From NCBI RefSeq assembly GCF_000143415.4, contig NW_003314291.1:1007702-1071701 (forward strand): 64,000 bases of DNA, read 5' to 3'. How positions within the stretch are numbered: position 1 is the stretch's first letter; each line of letters starts with the position of its first letter. The position numbers were made by a program, and so were the translations under genes. Positions 1-37,689 of this stretch are shown here, one piece after another. The notes beneath the pieces are model-generated. The model was not told the origin of the DNA and searched no databases. It saw only the letters and a list, made by a program, of their open reading frames with translations. This DNA is from Selaginella moellendorffii. Its lineage: Eukaryota; Plantae; Lycopodiophyta.

Positions 1-2974
1 TTGATAGGTTCACGGCCACAAATAATTTCAAACAGTACCACTCCAAAGCTGTACACATCTGATTTTTCTGTGAGTTTGCTGTAGGAATGGTACCTGAGAA
101 ACCATTCATAAATCAATCATAACGATGGTTTGAACCTGAATAGATAAAAAAGAAATTTTTTTCTCACTCTGGATCGAGATATCCTGGAGTCCCTTTGACA
201 ATAGTTGAGACATGAGATGTGTTGTTCTTGTCATAAAGCTTGGAAAGCCCAAAGTCAGTGACTTTGGCAACCATAGCAGAACTTAAGAGTATGTTGGTTG
301 TTTTGATGTCACGATGGATTATATGAAGATTGCAAGACGTATGCAAATACTCCAATCCTACAAAATTCACTGCTGAGAGTCACTATACAAACTCATCTCA
401 TTTACCTTGAGCAGCGTCTAAAGCAATTTGCAGCCGAGATTTCCAGCTTAAAGTTGGACAGTTTGTGCCTATATGACACATCATAAAGAAACAAATGGAT
501 CAAAAGAAGATATCACTTACCATACAAGTGCTTTTTTATAGTTCCATTTGACAAAAACTCATAGAGCAGTATAAGCTTCGATCCATGGTCACAGTAGCCA
601 AGAAAAGAGACCAAGTTCCTATGATGTACCACTGATAGAATATCAATCTGCCGAGAAGATACAATCAGTTTGGTATTCATGCTTGACGATCAAACGCACC
701 TCCGTGTTAAATTCTTGATATCCTTGCTTTGAGGTGCTTGACAAGACCTTAACAGCAACTTCCACACCATTGGAAAGGCAGCCATAGTACACTGGTCCAA
801 AGCTTCCTTCGCCTAGAACTCGCTTGAAGTTGTTTGTGGCCTCGACCACAGCTTTATAACTAAAGATTTTGGTGTTGGAGTTTGGAGACTTTGGAGCCAG
901 GCCTGGGAGATGAAATGCAAGCTATAAACACAAGGCTTAGACTTTGCAACTTACCTGGACTCTTGGTATCTTTGTTATCTTTCTCCTGTGTTCCGATGGT
1001 TCTTGGGCTGTTATCTGCTGTTTTTCTATGGGACATAAAACACACGACGAGTCCAGTCGCAAGTAGTATCACGGCTATGCATGGAACCGCTACTCCAATT
1101 AGAAGTGTTGTATTTTTTTTCTTCTTTGTGTGGCATAACTTAAAAGTAGTGCTGCGGGAAGTAAAACGATATATAAATTTCAAGAGAGAAATTCGTATAC
1201 TAACTTGAAATGCATTTCTGGTGGTACGCAATCCAAATTGTTGTTTTGTAATGATCTGTAACATAGTGACTATAAGGACTATTTTATTATATGCAGTACT
1301 CACAAAACCGTGAGGTTTTTCAAAGAGCTAAAGTCTGGAACTGGCCCTGTCAATGCGTTGTTATCCAAATATCTGAAGAACTAAAAATGAGAAAAACAAA
1401 GAATTGCTAAAGAACCTTCCATACATTTTTGTTAGATGCGATAGGTTCATGATGGACCGTGATATGTTACCACTTAGCCGCTGATTGGACAAGTTCCTGC
1501 AGTGAGAGCTCTTAAGTTTTTCGTATGATAGATCTAGATACGTCCCTTACAGCTCTGTAATTCTCGCTGGGATTTGAGCTACATCGCAAGTGATCCACCG
1601 CCAAGTGTACGGAAGTGGCAAGCAAGGATCTCCCGACCATCCAGTGATGTTAAATTCGTTCATTACATTGCGAATCGCTACCACTGTCCAGAAAAAGGGG
1701 AAAAAACGAGACTTTAATAGCATAAATTATGCTAAATACCATCGTCGGGTTCTGTCCCTGGAAGGAGACCACCTTTGTACATGAAGAGCTCGGCGGCATT
1801 GAGGATTGGACCCAGCGTAGAGTTTGGCGTGGGAACGAGAAAGAAACGCGTTGGATCAGAAAGCTCCACGGGAGCTTCGAGATACACTTGCACTGAAGTA
1901 AGCGGAGCCTGGGTGTGCTTTTCGATGTTGACGGTCACCGCGATCTGGGGAGTTTCAAGAGAGCTGGTGTTGAAAAGGAGCATGAACTCTCTCGTGTCGT
2001 TCCCCAGAGCGAAGAACTCCGCAAAGTAAAAGTTGACGTAGTACTTCGTTGCCTCGAGCGTGACTGGAAACTCGAAGACCATCACGGAGTTGGAGACGAT
2101 GGCGGAGCTCATCACCGCGGTGGGAGGCTTGTTAGAAGTTTTCCCTACGGAAACAGTCGAGTTAGTGTTGATCCGCTGGTAGCTTCCCATGTTTTTGAAG
2201 CCCTTGTCAGCTCTCCATATTCGATCGTATTCATCCAAAGGATACCTGTTCGAAGAATTGAACGCTCGAAGAGAAAAAAGTTTGGGAGTTTCTTACCTGA
2301 TATCTTCGTTTGAAGTTGCTCCAAGATTGATCCTTCTCCACATGAGTAAGACCTCACTATAATCCGAGACACTTCCACTCATCCCAGGAGCCAGCCTTCT
2401 AAGCTCGATTGTGGAGATGAATGGGATATTTGCCGGTGAATTCGAGCTGGTTCCAAGGCATAGATCTAGTGTCGAGTTTGTGGCTTTCACCACAAACTCG
2501 CAGTACGACGACGACTGGCTTCCCAGGCTCGCATTCATCACAGTATTCGCACCAATTGCAATGTCAAACTCGGCTACAGTTGATTCCAGCCCGTCGTAGT
2601 TTCCGTAGTAGAACCCCGGCCTCACGATGTAGCTCTCATCCACGACGACTGGCAAAGCGTAGCAGTGCTTCCGGGAGGTGTCGCTAAAGTAGCGAAGACG
2701 CTGAAAAATTAGATCCGAGTCTTGTTTCAAAGAGCTTGCAATGAAGGTTTTCACTCCGGTGGTGATGTATTTGTCGTCGGGTATCCATTCGATACCATTG
2801 TCATCCGTGTGGCTGTCGAAAGCTCCACAGTCGAGGCTCAAAAACCCTGGACAAAATCGATAGAGTACTTATAAAAGCGTTTGGATCGTGGAAATGCTGC
2901 TCACCTGGTTGAGCTGAAACAGAAGTCTGTCCTGCAAGGATCAAGCCACACGTGAAAAGGAGAAGATGCCACAT
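1..2974 (-). CDS. Malectin-like/LRR receptor-like kinase (LRR-I, IOS1/FRK1-like); multi-exon, 3' end runs out of the window
   Basis: ATG at 2974 gives signal peptide [23 protein letters not shown]. Malectin-like exons ([26 protein letters not shown]), [12 protein letters not shown] cap, three short LRR exons, TM segment, then kinase motifs [45 protein letters not shown] introns. Confidence 0.95.
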
Positions 2975-6236: not shown

Positions 6237-6489
6237 CTTGTCGAGCTTGGGCTTGACCTAGAGCACTGATCGCAAGCTCGAGTCTTCTTTACAACAACAC
6301 GCAAGAGGGAACAAGGAAGAATTCTTATTCTTTAAAAATTCCCAAGTTCCGTGTTCTTTCATGCAAGAAGTGGGCATCTTTCATCATGGCCATTTTGCAG
6401 ACTCTCGCTTTCGGGATTTTCTTGACTCCGTCAACTTTTTCCGTCGTATAAGAACCCATGCGATATGGATGATCTTCAAGTGTTTCGCA

Positions 6490-6918
6490 ATGGGAGCAAC
6501 ATTCCAGCTTGGTTTTCTCGTGCTTTTTCTTGTGGCAAATGCTTGGCCTCAGGATGATGGTGATGGAGAGATCGCTGCTGATGCTGGGATTAGTTCTTGT
6601 CCCAGTGAAACCGAAGAGAATGTGATTTACTACAACACCGGAGAGAGCTCCGAAGATAGTCCATTCGAGAAGAACTTGGCATCGGCTTATGAATCCCTGC
6701 TATCTCCATCTCAGGAATCTCCCCGGCAGGCCCAAGTTGGGGACGATCCAGACACCGTCTATGGCTACGCTACATGTTTCGAGGGAAATTGTGAGGATTG
6801 TCTCGCCACTTGCAAGAACTACTTCACACAAGTTGCTCCTCACGCAGTTGGAGCGAGACTATGCCTGAAAAGTGGCTCTGATGCTTGCTATCTTCGCTAT
6901 GAAAACTATAGTTTCTAG
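6490..6918 (+). CDS. Secreted single-domain DUF26/Gnk2 cysteine-rich protein
   Basis: Signal peptide MGATFQLGFLVLFLVANA, then S.F..NL, GDDPDTVYGYATC..C..C and a CYLRYENYSF end typical of DUF26. Confidence 0.85.
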   Translation: MGATFQLGFLVLFLVANAWPQDDGDGEIAADAGISSCPSETEENVIYYNTGESSEDSPFEKNLASAYESLLSPSQESPRQAQVGDDPDTVYGYATCFEGNCEDCLATCKNYFTQVAPHAVGARLCLKSGSDACYLRYENYSF

Positions 6919-7387: not shown

Positions 7388-8584
7388 TTATGGAGTCTTC
7401 CAGAGCCAGGAGAAGTGCTTGAGCAGCCCCCCAGCTCTGTGCTTGGTGGACATGGAGCAATCACACTGAAGAACCATCACCATCGTGGACAGGCCACCAG
7501 CCTCGAGGAAGGAATCCTCCACTGCGTGAGAACCCACCGAGTGGTGGCACACGATTAGCGCCCAGGCGATGAAAGTGCCATGCTCGGTGGCTTGTGTGGA
7601 GATCTTGAGCACGCAGCCCAGGATTGCTGGCACCGCTCTCGCGTGATCCACCGCCAGAGCTTCTCTCCCCTCGGCGCAGCAACACAGCGTCCTGAGGAGC
7701 TCCAGACTTTGCTGCTTGATCACCGCCGTGGGCTGCTGCTCGAGGAGGAGATCGATCAGGAGCTTTGGAGATCCGCATTCGATCGCCCGGAGCTTGAGCT
7801 TGGTCGGCTGAGTGGCGAGGAGGACCAGCAGGGACTTGAGAAGCGGCGATGCTTGATCACCGGTGGTGTTCTTGGCGAGGAGCCACACCAGCCCTTGGAT
7901 GAGCGCATCGAGGCCGTCGATATCTCGCATTTGGCGATGGTCGTGAGCCGAGAGTGATGATAGAAGAGTTTCCAAGAGGCTGGCGGCGTTTGTTCTCACC
8001 GTTTTGCTGCTGCTGGTGAGTAGTCTGGCAAATCTCTTTAGAGAATCGAAGCACGCAGCAAATGCCCTTCTTGTGAATTTTGCGTCGAGCTTACAGAGCG
8101 TGTGTAAAATCGAGAGGGCTGCCGCTTGATCTTCCTCCTGGATGGCCCTCTCCGCTAAGACGGTCGCGAACAGAGCTTCCAGGAACTCGTCGTGATCGCC
8201 CACTCTCTCCCAGATGGAATCACCGCTGGGGAGCTTGCTCAATGCAAGCAAGAAGCTCGAGTCCAGGAGCTCGGCTATGGCTACGCTACTCGTATCGATT
8301 TCTCTGCAAAGTACCTCTTCCAAGCTGATGATCGCCTCCTCGTTGCTGCTACTGCTCCACGATTTGATGAGCTGCTTGAGAGTGGAGTTTGGGATGAGCT
8401 CGCATGAACCGAGAGCTTGGCGCGTGACTGGACAAGCCCTGTTGCCATCCAGCAGCCACTTTTGGATGCTGGAGCGCTCATACGTGATCCCGGAGCTCAG
8501 GATCACGGGATCCTCCATGAGCTCGAACGAGATTGGGCAGCGAAAGTATGGGGGGATCTCCGCATTCTTCACAGGTAGTCTCAT
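7388..8584 (-). CDS. Plant U-box E3 ubiquitin ligase with ARM-like C-terminus (CMPG1/PUB20-26-like)
   Basis: IPPYFRCPISFELMEDPVILSSGITYERSSIQKW..CPVTRQ..LIPNSTLKQLIKSW U-box, LCCCAEGR motif, intronless. First ATG at 8584. Confidence 0.93.
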   Translation of the reverse strand: MRLPVKNAEIPPYFRCPISFELMEDPVILSSGITYERSSIQKWLLDGNRACPVTRQALGSCELIPNSTLKQLIKSWSSSSNEEAIISLEEVLCREIDTSSVAIAELLDSSFLLALSKLPSGDSIWERVGDHDEFLEALFATVLAERAIQEEDQAAALSILHTLCKLDAKFTRRAFAACFDSLKRFARLLTSSSKTVRTNAASLLETLLSSLSAHDHRQMRDIDGLDALIQGLVWLLAKNTTGDQASPLLKSLLVLLATQPTKLKLRAIECGSPKLLIDLLLEQQPTAVIKQQSLELLRTLCCCAEGREALAVDHARAVPAILGCVLKISTQATEHGTFIAWALIVCHHSVGSHAVEDSFLEAGGLSTMVMVLQCDCSMSTKHRAGGLLKHFSWLWKTP

Positions 8585-9750
8585 GGATGATCGATCAATC
8601 AGATATGCAAAAAGATGCAACTTTGGGAGGAGAAAAAGCCTTCATACCCTGAGGATAGCAACAACTTTTCTTCTAGATCAAAAGCAGCAAGGATTATCTG
8701 TTGATTGACAAGAGAGGATTCGGAGCTCTAGTTTAAAAGATTCCATGAGAGCAATGAAAAGAAGTGGCTATGGAGTGAAAGGAGTAGCCTTTGGTATACC
8801 TAGTATTTTCCAATATTGCTGCTTTACCAACCTGCTTTTAGGCATATGGCCCCAAACAGAATTGTCAAGGCTTGGCTTTGAAAGTTGAGCCATCTCATTT
8901 TTCAAGAAAAAACAGAGAGTAAAAATGCTAAAATATAAAACAAAAACAGAGAAAAACAAAAAACATCCTTTTCTGATGAGCCAGTTTCAAATCTTTAGGA
9001 GGCACTGGAAACTCATTCCACAGCAGCCATTCCTTGTTAAAGTGCAGAAGAACTTGCTCAGTTTTCGCCTTCATTTTCTGCACTCAATCCCTGCGTGCAC
9101 TTTCGTTTTCACCTCCGAAACTGGTTGTTTCTCAGATTGACCGGTCAGAGCGTGTGTATCAAGTGTGAAATGGGCTTTGTATTCTGGTCAAACTGGACAG
9201 TGTAGTGCAGGAAAAAACTATAGTATAGCAAAAGTATATAGCAGTAGTATGTGTGAAGCTATATACGCTGGAATCGACCGACCACGCGTGTTCCTACTAC
9301 TGTAACTATGTCGCCCCCTCGCAAAACACGCTCGCAGCATTTCCCCGGTTCTTCCACACATACATTGTCAGGGGTTGACTAGAGGTAGTGCCCAAAGAGA
9401 AAAAAAAGAGAGAAATAATGGTATGGTCGTGCACCGCGAAATAGTCCCAGGAAGACCGCGCGTTTTTCTTGGCGTGCTCGGTGCGACTTTGGGCTATGGC
9501 TGGTTGGCTGGTAGATTTGGAGGTTTTCTTTTTCGCTCTTCTTCCTTCCGTTTTTTGTTCATTGTCAAACCAACTTTACACGGTCTTTCTTTTTATAAAG
9601 ACGCGGTCGATGCAGCGTTTTCTTTCTTACCAAGTTTTTGGAGTTCTCTGTAGAGATCCCAGGGCGATCGCGGTTGTGGATCAGGAAGACTTGGATCTGG
9701 AGATATCACACAGAGTTCCTTGTAAAATTCTCCCGCGGTCGGCAGAGGCG

Positions 9751-10089
9751 ATGAGGAGCACCAGAGTCCTGGCTTTGATCCTTGTGATGGGTTTATACTG
9801 CTCGGGCTTCATCCAAGTGGCTGTTTCGGCAAGATTGGTTGTCGCAGAGAAGCAGCAGGAGAGCAACGATCATGGAAAAGACCAGGCTGGTGATCATCCA
9901 GCAGCAGCGGTGGAATGGATTCACAAATCTCCTAGCAGCAGCCATGTCTTGCATTCGTCCAATGGAAGAGTGTTTAGCCTCTCGCTCAACAGGATGCCAA
10001 AGAAGGTGACTCCACCGTCGGGGCCGTCCAAATGCCACAACGCGATTTCCACGGCCCGGGCTTCCACCATGGCAAATTGCAGGAACTAA
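9751..10089 (+). CDS. Small secreted peptide precursor 1 (IDA/PIP/CTNIP-like, 112 aa)
   Basis: Signal peptide MRSTRVLALILVMGLYCSGFIQVAVSA, variable region, C-terminal MPKKVTPPSGPSKCHN...C. TATA-like tataaa near 9594. Confidence 0.85.
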   Translation: MRSTRVLALILVMGLYCSGFIQVAVSARLVVAEKQQESNDHGKDQAGDHPAAAVEWIHKSPSSSHVLHSSNGRVFSLSLNRMPKKVTPPSGPSKCHNAISTARASTMANCRN

Positions 10090-10850
10090 CACCAGTGGAT
10101 TCCACTCATTTTTCCTTTCTTTTTTTTGGGTGGGGAGCTTAGATCAACATTGTTAGATAGTCCATTCTTTTCGGCGATTTGGAGGCCAGTGTAGAGAAAA
10201 GGCTAGACACAGACACTCACACTTGTTTTCTTGTCTATAAGAAAGTTTTGTTCTCATGAAAACTTGTATAGAAAACGATCCAAAGCGCTTTGGAGCCAAC
10301 ATGTTTTGACACAAGATTTGGAATCGACAAACCGGCGGCAATTTCTGCTTAGTTGTAACCCAACATCAAATCAATCAAACATCACCAAGAAAAATCTAAA
10401 CAAAAGAATGAGTGAGTGACCCTCCGATTTGTCAAAAAATGGCGGCTCTGAGAATATTGCGTCAATCATGAGACCGGATTGTCAATGGTCAAAGACCACG
10501 TGTCACCGACGTGGCCGAGTAGAAACGCTAGAGAACTCGTAAAAGTCAACCAGCCGAGAACGTAAGTGTGTGTCGATGGATTTCGAAGATCTCCACGCGA
10601 CTATCAAGATCAAGCGGCCTGATCTCCACACAATAGAGTTTTCGATTATCCACAAAGCACTGCGCGGAGATTCCAGCCCGTGGTTCGCATCTCTATATAA
10701 CACATGGGCTGCCTGTTTCCTCCCAGCGAAGTTTCTGGCTGGCTAGCGAGAGATTCACCGCCATCATCAGGCTTGGAAAGTTCGGGCCGCAGCTTGAATC
10801 GTATAAATCCATGCTTCCACCCCGTGCTTTTGATTTCCAGGCCGAGGATC

Positions 10851-11120
10851 ATGTACATGGCTTGTAGAAGAGCTGCAGGTGTTTTCGTGATCCTGGCGGC
10901 GATGGTTTTCCTGGATTGTTGCGGGGCATCGAGGCTTTTAATCGCTGGTGCTGGTGTTGGAGAGTTGTCACAAGGATCATCAAGAGTCTCAAGCCCATCT
11001 TTGCATCTGGAGCAACACACGCTCCCAAAGAGAATACCAGTTCCTCCATCGGGTCCTTCTAGATGCCACAACAGTCTCTCGGCGCGATTCAAAGTTAAGC
11101 GTCCAGGGCCATGCCAGTGA
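10851..11120 (+). CDS. Small secreted peptide precursor 2 (IDA-like, 89 aa)
   Basis: Signal peptide MACRRAAGVFVILAAMVFLDCCGA. LPKRIPVPPSGPSRCHN aligns with the IDA EPIP motif LPKGVPIPPSAPSKRHN. Second Cys at the C-terminus. TATA at ~10694. Confidence 0.88.
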   Translation: MYMACRRAAGVFVILAAMVFLDCCGASRLLIAGAGVGELSQGSSRVSSPSLHLEQHTLPKRIPVPPSGPSRCHNSLSARFKVKRPGPCQ

Positions 11121-13088
11121 CGATCTCCAGTCTCTCACAAACTCTCACAAAAAAAAGCCATTCTTTCCATATTTTTAAATGTTAATAGCAATTATTATTG
11201 TACTAAAGCATATACTTATAAATTATAAACACAACAAAGCTATAGTTGTCCTTTTTACTGTGAGATATATTTGATTAAGCCCATAGTGGCGTATTAACTG
11301 TAATATGCCTGGTAGATGAGCGACAAGGCCATCTTTTCTAGCATTGTTATGCTCGCAAACCCCTTGGTTGGATGTCTCCCAAGTTTATAATTGCGTCGGG
11401 ATCGCGAAACTCTCGCCCGGATAGGATCCACCCCTTCGTGCTTTTGATCTTCTCTCGACAGCCCAATGAAGTCTCGCATCGAGCACAAGCGATGCATGAT
11501 CCGCCGCTGTTCTTCTTTCTTTCTAACGAGAAGATTTTGTCTCGTCTCGGGGCCTGGGACATGGACGCTGAGAGCCTGGTACCATAATGATTTTAAGAAG
11601 CACATTAGTCCAAGCAAAGCTTCCCGACCTGGTCGTGACTGGCAGCAGCAATCCAGTGTGCCTGCCATTTAAGTCTGTGGTGTATAGAATAAGTGTACGT
11701 GCTGGCTGGATCTGTCCCGGCGCTGCACTCCAGAGTGAGTCATCACAAGGTATGTAATCTAGCATTTTTTTCCTAGAGATAAGAACTTACATCCACTTGG
11801 AAGAGCTTCGCACGCAAAGCATATAACGCGAGGAGACACTCCAATGCCATCTGTGACCGTGTTGGAGTTGAACACTTCAAAAGGTTGTGTTGGAAAAAAC
11901 ATCGAAATGCTACAGCAACATGACGGAAGGCTGGCGTTAAAACACAAACGAAACGACCAACAGACCGGCAGTAAAGCAAGGCGAAAAACCATAGAAAAGA
12001 GAAAACGAAAAGGGAGGAGATCAAAAGTCTAAAAGCAAGTGAAAAAAAAAGGAAAAAAGAAGAGGAAGCGGTACCCGTTTGGACAATGCCGGTTCCCGTA
12101 CCGCACCAGTCGGTGATGTCCCACGCGCAGCGATCGATCTCAACTAAAAACAGTGAATCAACTCATTACCAGGCAATACTAAGCAGCCTAGAAACGAAAG
12201 ACTTACCAGTTTCCGTGATGTGATGGAACATAAAACACCGACTGTCGTCGTCCACTGTTGAATCCTAGCAGTCATAATAGAATAAGTAGCAAAAGTCGGC
12301 TCGGCTCGGCTCTAAGAAAATTAAATCTGAAAAAAAAGAAAAGAAAAAAGAGATGAAGAACCAAGACGAGTGGAAGGGTCATATACCTCTGAACGAAGCT
12401 TCACAAAAATGCACTTTTTTGTGAGATTGAACGAAGCTCTACAGTAGGATCCCCTCGCTTTTGCTGGACGCACAGATACTATCCCTTGTGAAGTGGGCCG
12501 GGGAGGAGCTCCTTTCTTACAAAATCCCGTGTCCGATGGCCCTGTGTCCAAACTCTCCTCGTTAGACAAATAAGCTTTCGAGTAAAAGGATAACTCACCT
12601 ACTTCTCGCACCATACTTTACACTCCGTTTTCCCTCTCTTTCGGCTGAACAGCTTAATTTGGTCGCGTCTGAGTCGAGCAAGCGAAAGGGAAACCTGTGA
12701 GGCCGCGACTTGTGTTGATAGAAATCCACACATCTCCCCCCATCTCCATCACAGCTTTCTTTTCTCTTTGCTTGTTGCTTTCCTTCGCTCACTCGCAATC
12801 CCACCTCATCTTCCAGCCAGCGAGAGAGAGCCTCTGTCTGTCTCGGAAGTACTCGCAGCTAGCTACGCTTTCCTTCTTTGATTGATTGAGAGCTCTTCTC
12901 CGCGAGTGCGTGCTTGTTCACCGAAGTAAAGGTTCCCTCTTCCGTCTTGTCCAGCTTCCAAGCTTTCATGCAATTATTTGCCACCGGCGCCACCACTTCT
13001 CGCTAGTCCCAGCTTCATTCTTTCTCGTTGCGTGTCGAGGCTACTCTGAAGATATTCTTGCTGCCCGGCATATGATCGCATCACCACC

Positions 13089-13427
13089 ATGGAAGCAGCT
13101 ACCGACAGAAAGAAGATGACGATCGTCGTGTTGAATTTCATCCTGCTGGGACTTCTCGCCGAGAATGCTTTGTGTGCCAGGTATGGAGTAGCAGGAATTC
13201 CAGCGGCTTCTCCCTCTGCCTCTGCTCTTTCCCATGTTCCGTCTAAGGTCCAGTCTCAATTCTTCACAGTTCCCGCAAAGAAAGAGGCCGATCCAGCATT
13301 GCTTTCCGAGCAGAGAATGATCCACAATATGCTTCCCCGAGTTCTCACCACTCCACCTTCTGGTCCCAGCAGAGGAGGAAACGATATCGGTCTACAGTCC
13401 ACCACGGCCCAGGATAGTGCACCTTAA
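13089..13427 (+). CDS. Small secreted peptide precursor 3 (PIP/IDL-like, 112 aa)
   Basis: Hydrophobic signal IVVLNFILLGLLAENALCA, then MLPRVLTTPPSGPSRGGN. Strong start context (accATGG). Confidence 0.82.
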   Translation: MEAATDRKKMTIVVLNFILLGLLAENALCARYGVAGIPAASPSASALSHVPSKVQSQFFTVPAKKEADPALLSEQRMIHNMLPRVLTTPPSGPSRGGNDIGLQSTTAQDSAP

Positions 13428-14216
13428 GCAGCTAGAACCGGGATATATCTCCATGCATATAAAGGCAGCGAGTATGATATCGAGTCACGTCCTCGGTTTG
13501 TCTGTCTTCGTAAATGATCGTCCGATGATGGTGATCAGTAGTACCGCGGGAACATCCAGCAGGTTTCTCGAGGGACCCCTAGAAAAAGAGGAACAGCTGC
13601 TGCACCAGGAAAAATTTTGTAAGGAGGAGATTGAAGTTTTTTTAATCATAGAGAGCTTACTGTTAGCAGAGATTGTTCATGTACATTTCCCAATGTCTTG
13701 GTTCTTTTTTTGATTCCTATCGTAAACCTGAAAAAAACACAAGTCAGACCAAAGCATAGGTGGTAATCAGTGTAAAACACTGACCGTTCTCCATTCAAAC
13801 AGCACCAACATGGGACTTTAATCACCAGTTTTTGTCTCCAATCCCGGCAGCAACCATCGCTGGCCGGATCTCTTTCGTAAAAGAAAGCCGCAGACTTTGA
13901 AAACTTAAGAACCTGTTTGAATAAAACACTGCAGAGCAGAATAAGAAGTCCAAGATCACATGCTTCACATGCATTCATAACGCACAAATCCATCACAGTC
14001 AAAGCTCAAATCCCCCGAAAAAAAGAAGAGAAACCAGAAGTTTTAGTTTGCAGTTAAGAAACTTGTAGTTAGCACCGAGCTAAAACCACAAAATTGCACG
14101 AAAACACGACCTCCTATAGCTTAGCGTTAAGAAAGCACGGGAGTCTAGGTAGTTACACAACAGCATAGTGTACATTACCAGCAGATCCAAACCCGTTATC
14201 AAGCTTTTATTAGCCT

Positions 14217-20774: not shown

Positions 20775-22822
20775 GAGGAGAGAGGACGTGCGATTATTTT
20801 TGCTCCCCCAAGGAAGGATAGAGGAGAGATAAGTATTTTTTCTTGGGTTGGATTTAATAAGGTGAGAGCTTGAAGGAGATCTAGACAAGAGTCTTCACAG
20901 CACGACGAAGATCGATGCGATGTTTTCTCGTCGCAGTTAAGAAGCGCGCTCTCTATTGACGGCTACGCAGATCAATGGATTCGTCTTCGTGCTTGGATGA
21001 GAAATCGATGCAGAGACAAGGAAGACCATGGGAAGGAAGCACAAGACATGTTTAAGCGTTCTTCTCAAAGCCAGAGCGAGCAAGCAAGGGCTTTGAGGTG
21101 TGTGTAGAGTTATGAGGCTTCACTCAAGTTAAACTATGGATGTTTGTTTCTCGCTCGTATGTGTGTACACACGACTACGTATCTTTTCGGAGTTTCGAGG
21201 GAATCTCTACGATTGGAAAAAGCAGATGTGTGTTCTTTCTGTGTGAGAAGATCTCTTTAATTTGAATCAAAGCGTGGGTATAAAGGTTTGCTTTTTGCTC
21301 CCTCCATCCACCAGCTTTTGGTTTCCAAAAATTTTTGCTCGTTATCTTTTGATTCGAAAAAAAAATCATTCCAAAACCTTGTAAAGAACTTTAGGCTCAG
21401 TGGAGATGATAAAGGTGGCAAACAATGCCCCATCTAGAGAATATCATACCATGATATCTAAGAAGTTGTCAACAAAATGATTGTCCAAGAAATGCTATTA
21501 CCCATATGGTAATAAGATCTATATCTACCTGGCCAGTTGGTGGCCAGGGTGGCCCACGTTGGGCCAGTTGTGGCCACCGAATTACCCGGGTTATTTTTTT
21601 GAAAAATCCGCCAAAAGGATGGGACATCCATGCGCATGCGAATGCCCGGATGTGCGCATGCGCATCCATGCCCATCATGTGGGATTAAACATTAAACCGG
21701 TTAAACACACCACTAGAACCGCCCACGTTTAACCGAAAGGGTTAAGTTAATCTGGTAGCTTAGCTTAAGCAACCCTTTAGCTCTAGCTCGAGCTCCAATG
21801 TAGGCAGAGGGAGGACGAGGTCTTGCGCGGTGTCACTGCGCGTTTTGTTTCCAGCGCTTGTGTTCTTCCGCCGATCATTCCCTCGTCGCCGCGGCAGCGC
21901 GGGAGGATCCTGGCAGGGCTAGGGCTGCCGGGAATCCGATCGCAAGAAGCAGCGCTGCTCTCCGCAGATTATCTCGAGCGGCGCCAAGCAGATAGGGCCA
22001 AGGATCTCCACAAAGCTGCCGCCGCTGAGGTACCGCTGCGCGATTGACTGGATTAGAGCGTGGTGTGTGTCGGCATTGGCATTTCCAGGTGTGTGTGGGG
22101 TGCGTGTGATCGATAATCTTGTGATTTGAGGCGTTTTCTTGCAACTCCCTCCCTCTCTCTCTCGCACGCGCACACGATTCTTGGGTTTTTTTTCTCTTTT
22201 TTTTCTCTGCTCGAGCAGTGTAACATGTGACTGCTCTCACAGCTCACAAGAAAGCCAAAAAACGGTGATGGTCACAAATTTCGTCCGCGGGAGAGCACTC
22301 TCACAGGATAAAAAAGAGGGCTTCTTTTCTACTGCTGCTCGTCATGGGTCGCGGCATTTGGGTGTTGGCCAGGTGCTCCCAGGTGAGAGTCTCCTCCTCG
22401 TGAGTTTTTTTCGTTTCTTATCTATGGTTTTTATCGTTGTTTACTTGTCTTTGGATCCCGAGGCTGGGTCTTGGTCTTTTCTGTGATTTCTGCTAGAGAT
22501 TGAAGGTTCCTGTGTGAGCTTGCTCGGAAGAATTCGCTTCTTTTGCTTGTGAGCTTTTGGAAAAGACTGTTTTTTGCATGCATGCTTGTTGGTTGTTTAG
22601 CTGCTTTTCTTTTCGATATATAGTTCGTTGTTCTAAATCTTGTCTCCTTGTTTTGTATCACAGAAGTAGCAGCCTCTTTCGATGCACAGTGATCGTAGAC
22701 CCACCAAGAAGAACAGCAACGCGAGGCTGGTACTAGTAGCGCAGGGAAATCGCCAAAATCTCAAGAAGGAACAGGCTGACGAAGAGTCAAAAGGAGAGAA
22801 GGCTACCAATCTTTCCTTGCCA

Positions 22823-24492
22823 ATGACAATGGCGGATTTACTCACGCACCGGCATTTCTCTCCAGATATCTTGGAGTCCGATGCTTACAGCATTTCGGGT
22901 CTCTCGCCGCCGCTCTTTGTTTCGGATCACAACACCACCGATTCGGAAGAAGGGTCCCGGTCAGACTCGGGTGTAGTTTCTTCTTCGCCGGTCAATCTTC
23001 CCGCTACTCACACCACAGCAAGAGCGGCCACTGACGGCATGCATTTGTCGCTGGAGTTTGAAGATCTGGTGATACGTCGGGAGAAGATGAGGCTCCGCGG
23101 CGAGCAGCTCGCAGGTGGAGAAGGCGAAGAGGAAGCTAACAGGGAAGAGCTCTCTATGTTGGCTCTGGTGCTGGACACGCTGAGAAGATCCTTGCTAACA
23201 TGCAAGGCTTCCGAGGAGGAGGTTGCGTCCATGGATATTGGCTGGCCTACCAACGTCCGGCATGTAACGCACGTCACATTTGACAGGTTCAATGGCTTTC
23301 TCGGCTTGCCGGTGGAGTTTGAGATCGAGATCCCCCGAAGAGTTCCCAGTGCAAGGTTCGTTCCTGGCGTTTGTTTTAGCTGTTTACTTATGCTGTTTTG
23401 TTTTGTTTTTTTTTTCTCGTGTATCAGTGCCAGTGTTTTTGGTGTCTCTCCAGAGTCGATGCAATGCTCTTATGATTCCAAAGGCAACAGCGTTCCGACC
23501 ATTTTGCTGCTCATGCAGGAAAGGCTTTACAGCCAGGGGGGCCTTAAGGTCTGTGATTCTTTGTTTTCCTCTTCTCTTGACGTGAGTCTTTGTCGGTGTC
23601 CAGGCGGAAGGAATTTTCAGAATAAACGCCGAAAACAGCCACGAAGAAATCGTACGGGAGCAGCTCAACCGTGGGATCGTCCCACACGATATTGATCTTC
23701 ACTGTCTAGCTGGTCTCATCAAGGTATGAAAACAGCACGCACTTCCGTTAGTCTGAAACTATAAAGGCTCTGTCTCAGGCATGGTTCCGTGAGCTTCCTA
23801 AGGGGGTCCTCGACACTTTAACGCCCGAGCAAGTGATGCAGTGCCACAACGAGGAGCAATGTGTTGAGCTCGTGAAGTTGCTGCCTCCGACGCAAGCAGC
23901 TCTTCTAGACTGGGCGCTGAATCTCATGGCCGACGTCGCCCAGGAGGAGGCGTCAAACAAGATGAACTCCCGGAACATCGCAATGGTTTTTGCTCCCAAC
24001 ATGACTCAGGTACGTTCCTCTTTCATTTGGTGCTTGGTTTTTGTTTTCTTTTCTGTAATGTATTTCCTTTTGCTGTCCCAGATGGCGGATCCACTAACAG
24101 CACTCATGCACGCTGTACAAGTGATGAACATTCTAAAGACGCTGATTGTGAGGACACTACGGGACAGGCAAGAGGCTGTGCTCGATCCAGGCCCTGCACC
24201 GTCTTTGCCGAGTAACAAGGACGAAGATGACGACCAGCAGCACTGTGGGAGTGGACTGATTGACAAGGCAACTTCGGCAGAAGAAGAGTACGATGACTAC
24301 AGGCAACACCAACAACAGCAGCAGGAGCAAGAGGAGCTGGATCAAAATCACCGTCACCACCATCTTCACAATCACCATCAGCAGCAGCAACAGGTGATGA
24401 TGCTCCACGCGAAGCAAAAGAAAATCCGGTCTGCCGCGCCGAGGCTGCTCAACAGAATAGACAAGCAAAGCGAGAGGGCCGAAGCCTGGTAA
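22823..24492 (+). CDS. RopGAP: Rop GTPase-activating protein with CRIB and RhoGAP domains
   Basis: CRIB MDIGWPTNVRHVTHVTFDRF; GAP motifs VFGVS, AEGIFRIN, AWFRELP, NKMNSRNIAMVFAPNMTQ; polyQ/H tail ending ERAEAW. Start is 22823 or the upstream in-frame ATG at 22682. Confidence 0.93.
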
Positions 24493-24711
24493 GAACAAAC
24501 TTTTGCTCGTTCTTACCATCGCTTTGCACAGATTGTTGTACCATAGCTAGCCAGTCGATCGCCAACAGCCGTTTGTAAAATAATCTGGCTGCTCGCTCGG
24601 TTCTCTCGAGTCTAACTTTAGTACCTTTTTTTCTCCTTATAAAACTTACATTTTGGTTTTGCAAAGCCAGAGTTCTAGGAAGACGAAAGAGAGAAGAAGA
24701 AGAAGAAGATA

Positions 24712-25110
24712 ATGGCGGACGAGCGAGAGTGGCTGGACGCTTGCTTGTTTTTGAGCAAAGGGCCATCGTTGGCGATGGAGTTTCTGGACGAGGAAGCTCG
24801 CGTGATGCTGTGGGCTTACTGGGAGCAAGCTCTGGAGGGTCCGGCGGAGGAGCTCTCGCAGGAACAGGGGATGAGTGATGAGAGGGCGAGGAAGCGGAGG
24901 GAGGCGAGGAGGAGGCTGGGAGAGATGCCCAAGTCGGAGGCGAGGAGAAAATTGGTGGGGTTGATGTCGAGTGTGGTTCCCGAGTGGCGAGAGTGGTGTA
25001 GAGAGCATGGCGAGAGGATCCGGGAGGAGCAAAGGAGTGGCGGCGAGGCGCAAAAGCTGCTGAGAGCGTTTAGCTTGAAAACCGGGATTAAATTGTCGCC
25101 TAAGTTGTGA
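24712..25110 (+). CDS. Divergent acyl-CoA-binding (ACB) domain protein
   Basis: Helix pattern A..F...L..E...LWAYWEQA.EG ... RKRREARRRLGEM...EA...LV.L....PEW follows ACB-domain spacing. Intronless. Confidence 0.6.
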   Translation: MADEREWLDACLFLSKGPSLAMEFLDEEARVMLWAYWEQALEGPAEELSQEQGMSDERARKRREARRRLGEMPKSEARRKLVGLMSSVVPEWREWCREHGERIREEQRSGGEAQKLLRAFSLKTGIKLSPKL

Positions 25111-25329
25111 ATCACTCTCAGCTAAACGTGACAAAGTAAAACTTGTTAAGAACCCTAAAATCTATTTATTTATGAATGTCAAGACAAAGTTTAAAACAAG
25201 GGTAATTTTATGTGATTTGCACATGCCTCCTATGCATCATTTATATTGTTATCGTGTGATTTATTGTTAATTTGAAATGATTAATTTAAAATGGATTAAA
25301 GTGTGCAAAAGTGATTTTTCCTTACATAT

Positions 25330-28300
25330 TTTTTTAAAAAATTTAATCTAAGTAAATAATCTTACAAAATTATTAAAAATTTATAAAGGGTATATCAATT
25401 ATTTTTTTGGATATTAGGACAAAAATAATGTACTTTATGAGTGCAATAAGATAGTGATTTATCTGTTTCACAAAATTAATTAGGATTGTTTTCAAAAGTT
25501 ACTTACAGAACTGAAATTTGAAAATTTCTTTACTTTATGATTTTTTGGTGAAGATGGAAAAACTTTAATTTTTAAAGTATTTCTAAAATACAAGTAACAT
25601 ATTTATTTTCGTTTAAACTATAAACTAGTATTGAAATAAATTTGTACTAGGGTCAAATTAAATTATTTGGTCATAACCTTGTAGTTTAAACAAAAAAAAA
25701 ATTAATTGTATTTTAACAACACCTAAAAAATCAAACCTTCTTTGTCTTCATTAAGAAATCTTTAAACTTTAGTTCATCAAACAAAATTTTAAAATATTTC
25801 TAATTAACTCTCTCACAAAAATAAATTAGTGTCTCACTGCATATATAATAAATGCTATTTTGTTATCCCAATATTTATAAAAGTGAACTGATTTATCTTT
25901 ACTTAAAATCTAAAAAACAATCAATTTAATTAAAAGATCTTACCAAATAGTTAAAATTTTATAAAGTGTACATCAATTCTTTTTGTGAATAGTAGGACAA
26001 AAAAATAATATACTTTATGTATGTAGTGAAGTGATGATTTATCCGTCTAGGAGAATTAATTATGAATGTTTTCAAAGCTTACTAACATAAATGAAATATG
26101 AAAATTATTTTACTCTATGACTTTTTTGTGAAGAAGAAGAAGCTTTAATTTTTAAAGTATTCATAAAACATAAGAAACATTTTTATTTTCATTTAAATTA
26201 TAAGTTTATGTAAAAACATATAGTGACCAGTTAAGTTATTTGAACATAAACTTCTAGGTTGGATAAAAAAAATAAGTTAATTGTGTTTTAACAACACTAT
26301 AAACATTATGGTTTTTTTATCCTCACAAATATATCTTCAAATAAATTTTTAAGCTTTAGTGCGTCAATCAAATATTTAAAATATTTCTAATTAACTCTTT
26401 CACATAAATAAATTAGTGTCTCACCACTCATATAATAAATATTATTTTGTTATCCCAATATTATAAACGGGAACTGATTTTTCTTTACTTAATGTATTTT
26501 TAAAATTTGATTTACTTAAAAGATCTAAAGTTTAAATCAATTCTTTTTTGAATATTAAAACAACAAAATTAATGTATTTTATGTGTATAGTGAGATGGTG
26601 ATCTATATGTATGAGAAAATTAATTAAAAATGTTTCAATGTTTAGCGAACTAAAATTTTAAAATTCTTTTACTCTATAATTTTTTAATAAAGATGGAGAA
26701 ATTTTTATACACACACTATAATGTGTATGTTATAATCTTCATTGTATTTATGATCATCACTTTACTTGCCATGTGGTCAAATAAAATCATGAGGTAGAAA
26801 TAAGTGTCAAATGTGAATTTTTTTTTTTTCATCACAAATTTTTTGTATATGGTGAGCAAAGCAAACTCAACGAGAGCACTTGATAAAAAAATAGGGGAAG
26901 AAGAGAATGCCGATATAAGAATGTTGTGGGATTATTGAATCTCAACAGCAATGCTAAAATAGGCTCAAGCTACGCAAGGTAAAAATCTTAGCAATCTATC
27001 ATGATGAAGAAGTTTTAATTTTTAAAATATTCATAAAACATAAGTATATTTTATTTTTGTTTAAAAGTATAAATTTATGTTAGCATCTTTTACATATGCA
27101 AAAGCATATAGTGACCAGTTATTGAACACAAACTTATAGTTTGAACAAAAATAATAAGTTGATTATATTTTACTAATACTTTAAAAATCAAAGTTTCTTT
27201 GTTTTTACCAAAAAAATTTAGAGTAAAGAAGTTTTCTTTAGTTCATTAAGCAAACTTTCAAAATATTTTTAATTAACTATTTCACAAATAAATTAGTGTC
27301 TCTCTACACATATAACAGATACTATTTTGTTATCCTAATATTTATAAAAGAGAACTGAGTTCTTTTTACTTAAATTTCTTATAAAAACAATATTTAATTA
27401 AAAAATCTAAAGTCAAAACGTTTCAAAAGTTTGTTTAGCGAACTAAAGTTTGAGGATTTTTGTACTCTAATTTTTTGGTCAAAATAGAAAAGTTTTAATA
27501 CACACACTATAGTGTGTATATTGTAATTTTCATTATATTTATAATTATCACTCACTTTGCCACGTGGTTAAATGTAAGCTCCTATATTTGGACTTCTCCA
27601 TAGATCACCCAACTCAGTACTATTCACACCTAAGGACACTTAACCCTAAATATCCCAAGATCCTTAATCAATTGGAAAAGGAGACACATTTTTGTTTAGG
27701 GGTCTTTTCCTTTTATATTTGAACTTTTATGTTGTTTCTCAAATCGTTTTCTTTAGTTATTTATAATGTACTACGCTGCCCTGCCATATGTTAATCTCAA
27801 CATATGGTGTGATTCCTTTAAGCTAATCTACCATGCTTCCTTGCCAGATGTCAATCTCAACATGTGGTGTGATTCCTTTAAGCTAATCAATAAAGTCTGA
27901 CCCATACCAAATATAAGCTCTTGAATTTGAACTTCTCGGAAGGTCACCCAACCCAATATTATTCAAACCTAAAGACACTTAACCCTAAATATCCCAATAC
28001 TATTAACCGATTGAAAAAAAGAGTGTTTTTTTTTTCATGGCCCTTTCCTTTTATATTTGAACCTTAAGTTATTCCTTTTAGGTGCTTACAATAAGTTTAA
28101 AACTTGAATATTTATTTTTTTATTACTTGCATTTGTAAGGGTTTTTTATGTGTGGCACACAAAGTTAGATCAATAAAAGCACTTGACAAAAAAAAAGGGA
28201 AGAAGAGAATGCCAAGGTAAAAGTGTTATGAAATTACCAAGTTTCAATTGTAGCGCCAGGACAAATTCAAGCTATACAAAGTAGAAATTTCAACAATTTC

Positions 28301-31859: not shown

Positions 31860-32110
31860 AAGAACAAACTTTTGCTCGTTCTTACCTTCGCTTTGCACCG
31901 ATTGTTGTACCATAGCTAGCCAGCCGGTTGCAAACAGGTTTCTCATAGAACTTACATTTTGTGTTTGCAAAGCCGACTGAGAGTGGCTGGATGCTTGTTT
32001 TTTTGTGAGCAAAGGGCCACGATCTACATAAACACTCGGGAAACAAACTGAAAGAGCAAGCCCACCAAATTTCTCCTTGCCATCCCTTGTTCCTACGAGA
32101 GCTCCTCCGC
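31860..32110. pseudogene. Internally deleted copy of RopGAP 3' flank plus the ACB-domain gene, partly inverted
   Basis: aagaacaaacttttgctcgttcttacc... matches 24491 onward and gagagtggctgga matches ~24725. 32020-32110 is the reverse complement of ACB-gene-derived sequence. Confidence 0.8.
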
Positions 32111-32319
32111 CAGCAGAAGAGAGAATATATGCTCTAGAATAACATCCAAGCATATAGTTATGTACAAGAAAATCATGAGCTGGTATCATGAAATGTGGTA
32201 ATCCCCAAGTCAAAATCGTGATATTTTGTTACTATCTAGGCAAACTTTTTTGTTTTAAATTTCAAATGAACGAATATACTTCAACTTGAGATGCCACACA
32301 GCCGGCCATAATTTACCAA

Positions 32320-35110: not shown

Positions 35111-35161
35111 ATAGGTATAAATTTCAAAACCAAGAATATTCCTTTCTTGGAGCGGGAGTTT

Positions 35162-35187
<26 letters not shown>
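35162..35187. repeat. (AG)n microsatellite
   Basis: Uninterrupted agagag run. Confidence 0.9.
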
Positions 35188-35198
<11 letters not shown>

Positions 35199-36739: not shown

Positions 36740-37588
36740 GGTTTGATGGTAAAAGCTTTTGGAAGGTTGGTTGGAGACTTTGGGCTTGAAAGGAAAATCA
36801 ATATTTTTTGGGACTCTGGTTTACTTTGTGATGCTATTTCTCAAAAGTTGGTGGATGAATTCAATATTTCTGTGGACAGTAATTCACAGGTTAAGGACTT
36901 TAAGTTTATGGTGGAGGATTGTGAGTTGAAAAGGACTCTGACTGTATTACCTGTGATTCTCTGTCACGATATAATTTTGGGTTCGCCTTGGATGCATCAA
37001 CACTGCTTAGAATTAGACACTAGTGGTTCCATAAGCACTTTAACTTTTGAGATTGATGATACTATATATTGCCTCGGTAATTATAATTTATCGATGTCCA
37101 GAAAGTATAAGAAAATAAACTAGCATATATGTACTACTTTTCATCAGGTATATTATAGCGGGATAATTAATGGCCATAAAATCAGGATTGAATTAGATAA
37201 TGGTTGTGAAATGTGTGCTATATCATTTGAACTTATCAAGAAACTTGGGCTTGAAGTAGTTCCTGATGAAAAGTATTTTGCAAAAAGGCTAGTTGCAAAT
37301 GATCAGACAAAAGATGGTTATGGAGTTGAGAATTTATGTTATCACTTGGCAAACTTTTCAGAAAGTAGAAATTTTCTTGCTATAAAAGATCCTAGAGAGA
37401 CCCTATTTCTTGGGATGGACTGGCTTCATAAGCACTCAGCAATAATTGACTACAGGAATCACGTTGTTACTTTTAAATCTAATGAATTAGATTGCTGGTA
37501 TAGATTTCAATACCCATCTGGTACATATGAAATAAGTAAACATAAATTTACTGAAGAGATGAGTAGTTTATGTTGGTGCTCATTTTAA
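36740..37588 (+). pseudogene. Tandem retropepsin-like (aspartic protease) domains, one in-frame TAG
   Basis: IFWDSG..ISQKLV..DIILGSPW and IELDNG..ISFELI..LFLGMDWL lie in the same frame, separated only by TAG at 37121-37123. Confidence 0.65.
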
Positions 37589-37689
37589 TAAATACTTATT
37601 TGCTAATTTATGAGCTTGAAAAAATCTTTATAAATTTGATCTTGGATAAGTTTTGGATTGATTTTGTTTCTCGCATTCTTTACAAAGAG

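What the first reader, a model, noticed from the sequence alone, without database searches (positions are those of the whole stretch)
9994..11120. Peptides 1 and 2 are IDA/CTNIP hybrids: SxCHN core plus a second C-terminal Cys
Seen: both replace the Arg of IDA's RHN with Cys and carry one more Cys near the stop codon (C-X14-C in CHNAISTARASTMANC, C-X15-C in CHNSLSARFKVKRPGPC), although the loop sequences are unrelated. Peptide 3 has neither Cys. Known: CTNIP/SCREW peptides have a PPSGPS-like stretch followed by two Cys forming a disulfide loop needed for HSL3/NUT activation, whereas IDA is linear and ends at HN. Inference: a disulfide-looped intermediate class linking the two families, next to a linear PIP-like sibling.
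Basis: partly seen in the sequence, partly recalled or inferred. Interest (0 to 1): 0.82.

Follow-up and report, generated by a model that had tools for sequence, protein, structure and literature searches.

The report
Spikemoss IDA-like peptides with cysteine pair
Two neighbouring, expressed genes of the spikemoss Selaginella moellendorffii encode secreted IDA-type hormone precursors with a cysteine in place of the usual arginine and one more cysteine at the tail end; the same pairing recurs in conifer and flowering-plant relatives, so it probably closes a ring like that of CTNIP/SCREW peptides, though no ring has been shown.

Summary
The window is Selaginella moellendorffii. Peptide 1 (CDS 9751-10089) ends ...PPSGPSKCHNAISTARASTMANCRN (C-X14-C). 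Peptide 2 (10851-11120) ends ...PVPPSGPSRCHNSLSARFKVKRPGPCQ (C-X15-C). Peptide 3 has neither Cys. Transcript data cover genes 1 and 2 without any splice.

"PPSGPS-x-CHN" precursors also occur in Picea, Amborella, Anacardium, Citrus, legumes and unnamed plant contigs. In 8 of 9 lineages the otherwise unalignable tail holds exactly one more Cys (spacing 6-26). Chance gives about 2e-4 to 1e-3.

In the 15-residue core, the Selaginella peptides match this CHN type best, then IDA/IDL, then CTNIP. Canonical CTNIPs read GPVPPSGPSGC-T-x-IP...C-P, against GPVPPSGPSxC-H-N...C-P for seed-plant CHN peptides. The CHN type therefore sits between IDA and CTNIP in sequence.

Three limits apply:
- The CHN motif was already catalogued as "PVPP-type IDA-like" and treated as a linear 12-mer, and SmIDA1-3 were reported in 2021.
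- The loops are longer than the 9-11 residues that define CTNIP.
- Neither the disulfide, the mature form nor a receptor was tested.

The scan flagged the same idea earlier on another piece of this genome (s1-433192).

The parts
9688..10294 (+). pep1 transcript (minimum extent)
   Evidence: Contigs of runs X1 (9688-10184) and X2 (9697-9878, 9885-10294) and stranded raw RNA reads of X19 cover it continuously. No splice joint was seen.
9751..10089 (+). pep1 coding sequence, 112 aa, intronless
   Evidence: ORF reading. It is 96-99% identical to SELMODRAFT_424795 and SELMODRAFT_416410.
10012..10041 (+). pep1 core PPSGPSKCHN (Cys95 at 10033-10035)
10078..10080 (+). pep1 second Cys (Cys110), followed by R-N-stop
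   Evidence: It is identical in the other haplotype (P0001).
10663..11152 (+). pep2 transcript (minimum extent)
   Evidence: Contigs of X1 (10663-11106) and X2 (10797-11152). The flanking intergenic DNA 10357-10658 is uncovered. These two runs are only guessed to be RNA.
10851..11120 (+). pep2 coding sequence, 89 aa, intronless, absent from the protein collections
   Evidence: No protein-database match was found.
11043..11072 (+). pep2 core PPSGPSRCHN (Cys72 at 11064-11066)
11112..11114 (+). pep2 second Cys (Cys88), followed by Q-stop
13089..13427 (+). pep3 coding sequence (alternative start 13116): the Cys-free sibling, ...PPSGPSRGGN...
   Evidence: Weak + strand RNA covers 12471-13527.

Best explanation
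pep1 and pep2 are expressed, intronless genes for secreted pre-pro-peptides of the IDA superfamily. They belong to a subclass I call the CHN type: [LM]P[KR]-x3-4-PPSGPS-x-C-H-N, followed by a variable tail that holds exactly one more Cys. This subclass is kept from lycophytes through conifers to flowering plants.

Proposed mechanism. After the signal peptide is removed in the oxidising secretory pathway, the Cys that replaces IDA's Arg(-3) pairs with the tail Cys. This closes the C-terminal 14-15 residues into a loop. The IDA-like linear core would lie in the groove of one of the three HSL-clade LRR receptor kinases of Selaginella. The loop would sit at the receptor/SERK interface, as the Cys58-Cys68 loop of CTNIP4 does on HSL3.

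Shown here: the sequences, their expression without splicing, the wide co-occurrence of the two Cys, and the sequence position between IDA and CTNIP.

Inferred: the disulfide, retention of the loop in the mature ligand, and the receptor.
For: 1. Structure of the genes. Each has a signal-peptide-like N-terminus and exactly two Cys after it. Transcripts are contiguous over the whole ORFs.

2. Co-conservation of the second Cys. Relatives came from three sources: an exhaustive profile search (Citrus P0007), a DNA pattern scan that specified only PPSGPSxCHN, and a published motif list.
- Picea has two genes, with X15 and X6 between the Cys.
- Amborella has X19 and Anacardium X12.
- Citrus has X26 in three species.
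- Vigna and Glycine have X21-22.
- Contig L017 has X18.
- Each of these has exactly one tail Cys, while the tails themselves cannot be aligned.
- 8 of 9 lineages fit; chance is 2e-4 to 1e-3.

3. RHN/SHN-type IDLs found in the same search have short tails without Cys (P0016, P0018, P0020, P0021; AtIDA). P0009 has one.

4. Register with CTNIP. Cryo-EM places IDA's PVPxSGPN/S motif and SCREW2 P49-N56 in the same receptor pocket. That puts the CHN Cys exactly on CTNIP Cys58.
- Canonical CTNIPs read GPVPPSGPSGC-T-x...C-P.
- Seed-plant CHN peptides read GPVPPSGPSxC-H-N...C-P*.
- pep1 ends C-R-N*, much as CTNIP4 ends C-H-N*.

5. In CTNIP4 the disulfide is required for binding and for SERK recruitment.
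Against: - No chemistry was done, so the disulfide is inferred.
- Loop length (6-26) and loop sequence are not conserved. That fits a tether better than a receptor epitope. CTNIP loops are 9-11 residues with an IP..G motif.
- H-N after the Cys, and the following [AS]-[IL]-S, look like the usual IDA/IDL site after which the tail is removed.
- Published models dock SmIDA peptides on SmHSL2 as linear peptides with the C-terminal Asn contacting the receptor.
- Exceptions exist. L012 has no tail Cys. Some soybean assemblies carry a Cys-to-Phe allele (P0036) or a frameshift allele (P0037).
- Common descent of the Selaginella and seed-plant CHN peptides cannot be proven from about 15 alignable residues, 9 of which were fixed by the search pattern.
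Confidence: 0.55

Rival explanations
1. These are ordinary linear IDA-type ligands. The precursor is cut after HN to give a 12-14-mer with Cys at -3, read by an HSL receptor through its free C-terminal Asn. The tail Cys only caps the reactive thiol while the pro-peptide passes through the ER, or gates processing, and is discarded with the tail.
For: - The core matches IDL at 10-11 of 15 positions, with IDA-like spacing and a basic residue before the Cys.
- HN-[SA]-[IL] resembles the junction in IDA/IDL precursors.
- Zhang et al. predicted PVPPSGPSPCHN as the mature peptide.
- Furumizu et al. modelled SmIDA peptides as linear ligands on SmHSL2.
- The variable loop length and sequence fit a disposable tail.
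Against: - If the two Cys are bonded, cutting after HN leaves the tail covalently attached. Release needs an extra reduction step.
- IDA's residue at -3 is Arg.
- Long conservation of the tail Cys, often as the last-but-one residue, suggests more than a chaperone role.
Confidence: 0.3
2. The Cys pair is coincidence plus shared ancestry of two tandem paralogues, with no structural role.
For: Within Selaginella there are only two related genes, and their tails otherwise differ.
Against: The same pairing is seen in 7 further lineages found without reference to the tail. Chance is at most about 1e-3, and each secreted part has exactly two Cys.
Confidence: 0.05
3. The cysteines form bonds between molecules (homo- or heterodimers of pep1 and pep2), or link the peptide to another protein, and do not close a loop.
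For: Two co-located, co-oriented genes each carry two Cys.
Against: SCREW2, the closest characterised analogue, forms no multimers in vitro or in planta. An even Cys count within each chain favours an internal bond. pep1 and pep2 were not seen expressed in the same raw-read runs.
Confidence: 0.05
4. The ORFs are not functional signalling-peptide genes (decaying duplicates or non-coding transcripts).
For: No Pfam hit in the local copy. pep2 is unannotated. Expression is low.
Against: Both have intact ORFs with signal peptides. The motif sits at the canonical C-terminal position. The C-terminal 67 residues of pep1 are identical between haplotypes while the N-terminal part differs at 4 residues. 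Both are transcribed.
Confidence: 0.05

Closest known systems
[quoted passage not shown] 2020, PMC7552357), predicted peptide PVPPSGPSPCHN. Examples: Amborella AmTr_v1.0_scaffold00135.62, Picea MA_9094901g0010 and MA_61343g0010, Anacardium Anaoc.0007s1467.1. Also Citrus ESR61521 and soybean and Vigna homologues found here.
   Same: Both have a signal peptide, a short variable region, LP[KR]-x-PVPPSGPS-x-C-H-N and exactly one further Cys downstream. 10-12 of 15 core residues are identical, though 9 of those were fixed by the search pattern. 'CHN-x-L-S' is shared with Citrus and legumes.
   Different: Selaginella keeps IDA's basic residue before the Cys (K/R, against P/Q/S). Its tails are shorter (15 residues against 18-26) and lack the angiosperm DDY..CP ending. 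The published description treats the 12-mer as the mature peptide and does not mention the second Cys.
IDA/IDL peptides (AtIDA ...LPKGVPIPPSAPSKRHN; receptors HAESA/HSL2 with SERKs). 'SmIDA1-3' of Furumizu et al. 2021 are probably these genes or include them.
   Same: The precursor layout is the same, as are LPK-x2-P-x-PPS-[AG]-PS-[KR]-x-H-N with identical spacing in pep2, the central Pro-Ser-Gly-Pro and the HN. pep2 matches IDL at 10-11 of 15 positions.
   Different: Arg(-3) is replaced by Cys. The tail is 15 residues long and ends in a Cys. There are two Cys in the secreted part, whereas IDA precursors have none after the signal peptide. The SmIDA sequences are not given in the text I could read, so the identity is unverified.
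CTNIP/SCREW phytocytokines (receptor HSL3/NUT; CTNIP4 Cys58-Cys68)
   Same: An IDA-like core is followed, after one residue, by the first Cys. A second Cys lies 1-2 residues from the C-terminus in pep1 and pep2, as in AtCTNIP1-4. There are only two Cys in the secreted part. 'C-H-N' lies on 'C-T-N' in the structure-based register.
   Different: The spacing is 14-15 against 9-11. There is no I-P-x-G-x-G loop motif. CTNIPs and HSL3 are known only from angiosperms. The published CTNIP search did not include Selaginella or Picea.
PIP/PIPL peptides (for pep3 only)
   Same: An SGPS core is followed by R-x-G. pep3 reads SGPSRGGN and TOLS2/PIPL3 reads ASGPSRRGAGH.
   Different: pep3 has no C-terminal GxGH. 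It resembles more the repeated MLP[KR]..PPSGPS[KR]G units of angiosperm multi-repeat proteins found.

Membership tests
IDA/IDL | Small secreted precursor: N-terminal signal peptide, variable middle, conserved motif near the C-terminus, no intron | tested here: met
   (by inspection; no SignalP was available). Unspliced transcripts.
IDA/IDL | PIP motif P-[IV]-P-P-S-[AG]-P-S-K-R-H-N with a C-terminal HN | tested here: inconclusive
   pep2 matches AtIDA's PIPPSAPSKRHN at 8 of 12 positions, with three conservative changes (V, G and R for I, A and K). pep1 matches at 8 of 12. HN is present, but Arg(-3), part of the motif, is Cys in both.
IDA/IDL | Cysteine-free pro-peptide giving a linear mature peptide that ends at HN | tested here: not met
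   The precursor-level part of the feature fails: there are two Cys after the signal peptide, one inside the motif. The mature form is not testable with these tools.
IDA/IDL | Match to the Pfam IDA-like family model | tested here: inconclusive
   The local Pfam copy gives no hit for any of these proteins. Precomputed PF27884 'IDL5' hits the seed-plant CHN peptides P0035 (strong) and P0007 (weak). It does not hit the Selaginella protein P0001.
IDA/IDL | Perceived by HAE/HSL-clade receptor kinases with SERK co-receptors | not testable with these tools
   S. moellendorffii has three HSL-clade genes according to Furumizu et al.. No receptor sequence could be fetched here.
CTNIP/SCREW | Two conserved Cys with 9-11 residues between them | tested here: not met
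   The spacing is 14 (pep1) and 15 (pep2), against 9-10 in nine CTNIPs.
CTNIP/SCREW | IDA-like PVPxSGPN/S stretch immediately before the first Cys | tested here: met
   pep2 reads PVPPSGPS-R-C and pep1 reads VTPPSGPS-K-C. The register comes from the cryo-EM description and from CTNIP sequences.
CTNIP/SCREW | C-T-N-I-P loop motif (Ile61/Pro62 in a hydrophobic receptor pocket) | tested here: not met
   The Selaginella peptides read C-H-N-A-I-S and C-H-N-S-L-S, with no I-P.
CTNIP/SCREW | Disulfide needed for activity; receptor is HSL3/NUT | not testable with these tools
   HSL3 is reported as an angiosperm clade. The pockets of the Selaginella HSL receptors were not examined.
CHN-type ('PVPP-type') IDA-like peptides | PPSGPS-x-C-H-N core in a small secreted precursor | tested here: met
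CHN-type ('PVPP-type') IDA-like peptides | Exactly one further Cys downstream of CHN (a feature proposed here, not in the literature) | tested here: met
   It is met in pep1 and pep2 and in 8 of 9 lineages.

The most novel reading that the evidence does not exclude
CHN-type peptides are an old family of disulfide-cyclised receptor-kinase ligands, at least as old as vascular plants. They are the stock from which angiosperm CTNIP/SCREW phytocytokines arose by loop shortening, alongside the birth of HSL3. On this reading, cyclic peptide perception by HSL-clade receptors predates seed plants, and an orphan ligand family in crops (soybean, citrus, cashew, spruce) awaits a receptor.
Probability: 0.35. 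Interest if true: 0.8.

Novelty: new variant of a known kind. Interest (0 to 1): 0.6.

Why it matters
IDA (linear; abscission and cell separation) and CTNIP/SCREW (disulfide-cyclised; immunity and stomata) are read by sister receptors. How the cyclic mode arose is unknown, and CTNIPs have been found only in angiosperms.

A family that carries IDA's core and HN together with CTNIP's two-cysteine layout, and that is present in a lycophyte, conifers and angiosperms, gives a concrete intermediate to test.

It also turns a list of "IDA-like" 12-mers into a different prediction about the mature ligand: a looped peptide of about 30 residues. It supplies natural test material too, namely soybean alleles that have lost the second Cys.

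All of this is sequence inference. Its value lies in making the question directly testable.

Tried and rejected
- Pfam in the local copy gave nothing for the three peptides or for their relatives.
- Word-based protein searches found only the two S. moellendorffii haplotype proteins for pep1 and nothing for pep2. With a three-sequence profile they added only Citrus.
- The annotated model SELMODRAFT_416410 (P0002) splices from ...NRMPKK to a downstream exon and so removes the motif. No read or contig shows that joint, so I rejected the model.
- I looked for the SmIDA1-3 sequences in Furumizu et al. and its preprint. They appear only in figures, and no supplement is held. The link between these genes and SmIDA1-3 therefore stays unverified.
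- I suspected that Arabidopsis IDL8 or IDL5 might be CHN-type. No text gave their sequences, so this stays open.
- An alternative register is the best ungapped BLOSUM alignment to CTNIP4. It puts PSGPSRCHN on CTNIP4's C-terminal PRGSGRCHN, with the CHN Cys on Cys68. I set it aside for three reasons:
  - The cryo-EM paper equates the IDA motif with SCREW2 P49-N56.
  - Canonical CTNIPs read GPVPPSGPSGC at the first Cys.
  - Only AtCTNIP4, of the nine CTNIPs compared, ends in CHN.
- The 11 non-plant hits of the DNA pattern scan are GC-rich contigs or lack a precursor context. I discarded them as chance matches.
- Receptor analysis and complex modelling could not be done, because no HSL sequence could be obtained by reference.
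I searched only single-exon ORFs by reference, and they gave no Pfam hit.
- Short peptide segments copied from paper supplements were used only in local scripts.

Full report
**What is there**

The window is from Selaginella moellendorffii. The peptide 1 ORF is 96-99% identical to SELMODRAFT_424795 and SELMODRAFT_416410, the two haplotype copies. A plant U-box/ARM gene lies just upstream.

A six-frame scan finds exactly three PSGPS-type ORFs in 64 kb, all on the + strand:
- pep1: 9751-10089
- pep2: 10851-11120
- pep3: 13089-13427

The quoted sequences and spacings are correct:
- pep1 ends ...PPSGPSKCHNAISTARASTMANCRN (C-X14-C).
- pep2 ends ...PVPPSGPSRCHNSLSARFKVKRPGPCQ (C-X15-C).
- pep3 ends ...PPSGPSRGGNDIG... 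and has no Cys after its signal peptide.

By inspection, pep1 and pep2 each start with a basic, then hydrophobic, then small-residue segment typical of signal peptides. Each has exactly two Cys after it.

**Are the genes real?**

Reads and contigs were laid on 9300-13800.
- pep1 is covered continuously from 9688 to 10294. Two contig sets cover it, as do stranded raw RNA reads whose orientation fits a + strand RNA.
- pep2 is covered from 10663 to 11152 by contigs of two runs. The intergenic DNA on either side is uncovered. These two runs are only guessed to be RNA.
- No splice joint is seen in either gene. The annotated model P0002, which splices the motif out, is therefore not supported.
- Between the haplotypes, pep1 differs at four residues, all in the N-terminal 45. 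The C-terminal 67 residues are identical.
- pep3 lies inside a 955-nt exon of an abundant minus-strand spliced transcript. Weaker + strand RNA also covers it.

**What is known**

- Furumizu et al. 2021 reported putative IDA orthologues SmIDA1-3 in S. moellendorffii, found by tBLASTn. They modelled them as linear ligands on SmHSL2. The sequences are only in figures, so I could not confirm that they are these genes.
- CTNIP4/SCREW2 is QRGPVRGSGRNGCTNIPRGSGRCHN with a Cys58-Cys68 bond. That bond is needed for HSL3/NUT binding and for SERK recruitment.
- CTNIPs were defined by two Cys 9-11 residues apart and were found only in angiosperms. That search did not include Selaginella or Picea.
- The cryo-EM paper states that IDA's PVPxSGPN/S motif and SCREW2 P49-N56 occupy the same receptor pocket.

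An exhaustive HMMER search used a profile of the two C-terminal regions against 1.84 billion representative proteins. It returned 20 hits at E of 0.001 or better.
- Most were RHN- or SHN-type IDLs, or multi-repeat PPSGPS proteins.
- One other CHN protein appeared: Citrus ESR61521, which ends ...LPKEPVPPSGPSQCHNALSPYYQTADKFSSTASKVDDYIGCP. It is conserved in three Citrus species.

A DNA pattern scan of metagenome contigs specified only PPSGPSxCHN and gave 17 hits. Six are plant-like precursors:
- L008 and L014 are a legume. They cluster with Vigna angularis P0033 and end ...EDYYVVCP.
- L018 is Glycine max.
- L015 is identical to Picea abies MA_9094901g0010.
- L017 is an unnamed plant and ends ...DDYIMCP.
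- L012 has a CHN motif followed by a CLE-like second motif.

The literature search then showed that Zhang et al. [quoted passage not shown] Their supplement gives three full precursors:
- Amborella: ...CHNKVDLSEHYESPGKNDIICGVPFAKSP
- Picea MA_61343g0010: ...CHNNQPNCPTV...
- Anacardium: ...CHNKNPDSSVTFYCDFSTQKP

In soybean the commoner forms of both paralogues end ...FCP. One assembly pair carries ...FFP and one carries a frameshift.

Taken together, 8 of 9 lineages have exactly one Cys in a tail that is otherwise unalignable. The spacing ranges from 6 to 26. Chance gives about 2e-4 for exactly one Cys and 1e-3 for at least one, at 2% Cys.

The RHN/SHN-type IDLs found in the same search, and AtIDA, have short tails without Cys. 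One has a single Cys.

No paper in the searchable library mentions the second Cys or a disulfide for these peptides.

**Position between IDA and CTNIP**

I compared a 15-residue core ending two residues after the Cys/Arg position.

| Compared with | pep2 (identities of 15) | pep1 (identities of 15) |
|---|---|---|
| Seed-plant CHN peptides | 9-12, mostly 11-12 | 10-11 |
| IDLs | 10-11 | 8-9 |
| AtIDA | 9 | 8 |
| Non-Arabidopsis CTNIPs | 8-10 | 7 |

Nine of the 15 positions were fixed by how the CHN set was found, so the first row is partly built in.

More telling are the canonical CTNIPs from the Rhodes supplement. Aquilegia reads QRGPVPPSGPSGCTYIPGNGGPSCPP, and the Amborella, Medicago and Theobroma sequences are alike. 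Seed-plant CHN peptides read PKGPVPPSGPSxCHN...CP*. The two share the same core, a Cys at the same place, and a second Cys that is often followed by Pro.

Selaginella pep2 keeps IDA's spacing (LPK-x2-P-x-PPS) and IDA's basic residue before the Cys. pep1 ends C-R-N*, as CTNIP4 ends C-H-N*.

So 'hybrid' is a fair description. Strictly, though, the peptides fail two defining CTNIP features: the 9-11 spacing and the I-P loop motif. They also fail IDA's Arg(-3) and its Cys-free precursor.

Amborella has both a CTNIP (C-X10-C) and a CHN gene (C-X19-C), so the two families were already separate at the base of the angiosperms.

**How it most likely works**

Shown:
- Two expressed secreted-precursor genes.
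- A Cys pair kept across roughly the whole span of vascular plants.
- Exactly two Cys in each secreted part.

Inferred:
- The pair forms an internal disulfide in the oxidising secretory pathway (my estimate about 0.7).
- The loop is kept in the active ligand, which binds an HSL-clade receptor the way CTNIP4 binds HSL3 (about 0.45-0.5).
- I put the combined statement at 0.55.

The main rival is a linear IDA-type 12-14-mer released by cutting after HN, with the tail Cys serving only in the pro-peptide.
- In its favour are the variable loops, the IDL-like HN-[SA]-[IL] junction and the published linear models.
- Against it, a bonded tail would stay attached after the cut.
- I put it at 0.3.
- Chance, dimers and non-function are minor alternatives.

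**Novelty and verdict**

The genes, the CHN motif and both neighbouring families are known. The new points are two: the CHN Cys always comes with one partner Cys, from a lycophyte to crops, and this family sits between IDA and CTNIP. I rate it a new variant of a known kind.

The scan raised the same idea earlier on another piece of this genome (s1-433192), probably the other haplotype. My added evidence is the cross-lineage comparison.

Noticed in passing
window 11241-13800, minus strand: An abundant spliced minus-strand transcript has very short introns: 11722-11791, 12143-12207, 12324-12387, 12540-12598 and 13596-13661, with CT..AC ends on the + strand. Its 955-nt exon (12598-13552) covers the pep3 ORF in antisense. 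Single-exon ORFs gave no Pfam hit.
   Followed up: partly
window 9751-10350 (gene model SELMODRAFT_416410, P0002): The public model splices ...NRMPKK to a downstream exon (KTIQSALEPTCF...) and so deletes the peptide motif. No read or contig shows this joint, and the unspliced ORF is what is transcribed.
   Followed up: yes
P0003 (Diphasiastrum complanatum KAJ7538441.1, 834 aa): This clubmoss protein carries about 14 tandem IDA/CLE-like units (LPKGPTTPPGPNPGHNAVI..., LPxGxNPPSGPNPGHNGAIL...). It looks like a possible polyprotein precursor of Cys-free xHN peptides in another lycophyte.
   Followed up: no
P0036, P0037 versus P0038, P0039 (Glycine max): Soybean has two CHN-type paralogues, on chr07 and chr09. 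Most assemblies end ...FCP. One allele ends ...FFP, having lost the second Cys, and one is frameshifted. These are natural variants that could test the role of the Cys.
   Followed up: partly
L012:5576-5830 (minus strand; metagenome contig Ga0157363_1001226): This plant-like precursor has a CHN motif followed by a CLE-like end (RMPIPPSGPSQCHN...KRLVPSGANPIHN*). It has no tail Cys but has one Cys after a signal-peptide-like stretch. The only upstream ATG is one base out of frame, next to a run of G, which may be an assembly error.
   Followed up: partly
P0004-P0006, P0008, P0012, P0014, P0015, P0019: Proteins of 94-229 aa with no source name in hand (organism not determined) are built of 2-5 repeats of MLP[KR]..P.PPSGPS[KR]G/T followed by Pro-rich spacers. 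pep3's MLPRVLTTPPSGPSRGG resembles one such unit more than it resembles PIP peptides.
   Followed up: no
window 1732-2238 (-), 6361-6918 (+), 7388-8620 (-), 22682-24492 (+), 57779-59032 (-): Neighbouring ORFs hit the following Pfam families: Malectin-like, Stress-antifung (DUF26), U-box with PUB ARM repeats, PBD with RhoGAP, and protein kinase. None is an LRR receptor of subfamily XI.
   Followed up: partly
window 24001-28000 and 32001-40000: These blocks have 31-33% GC, against 47-49% around the peptide genes. They are probably repeat or transposon-rich DNA.
   Followed up: no
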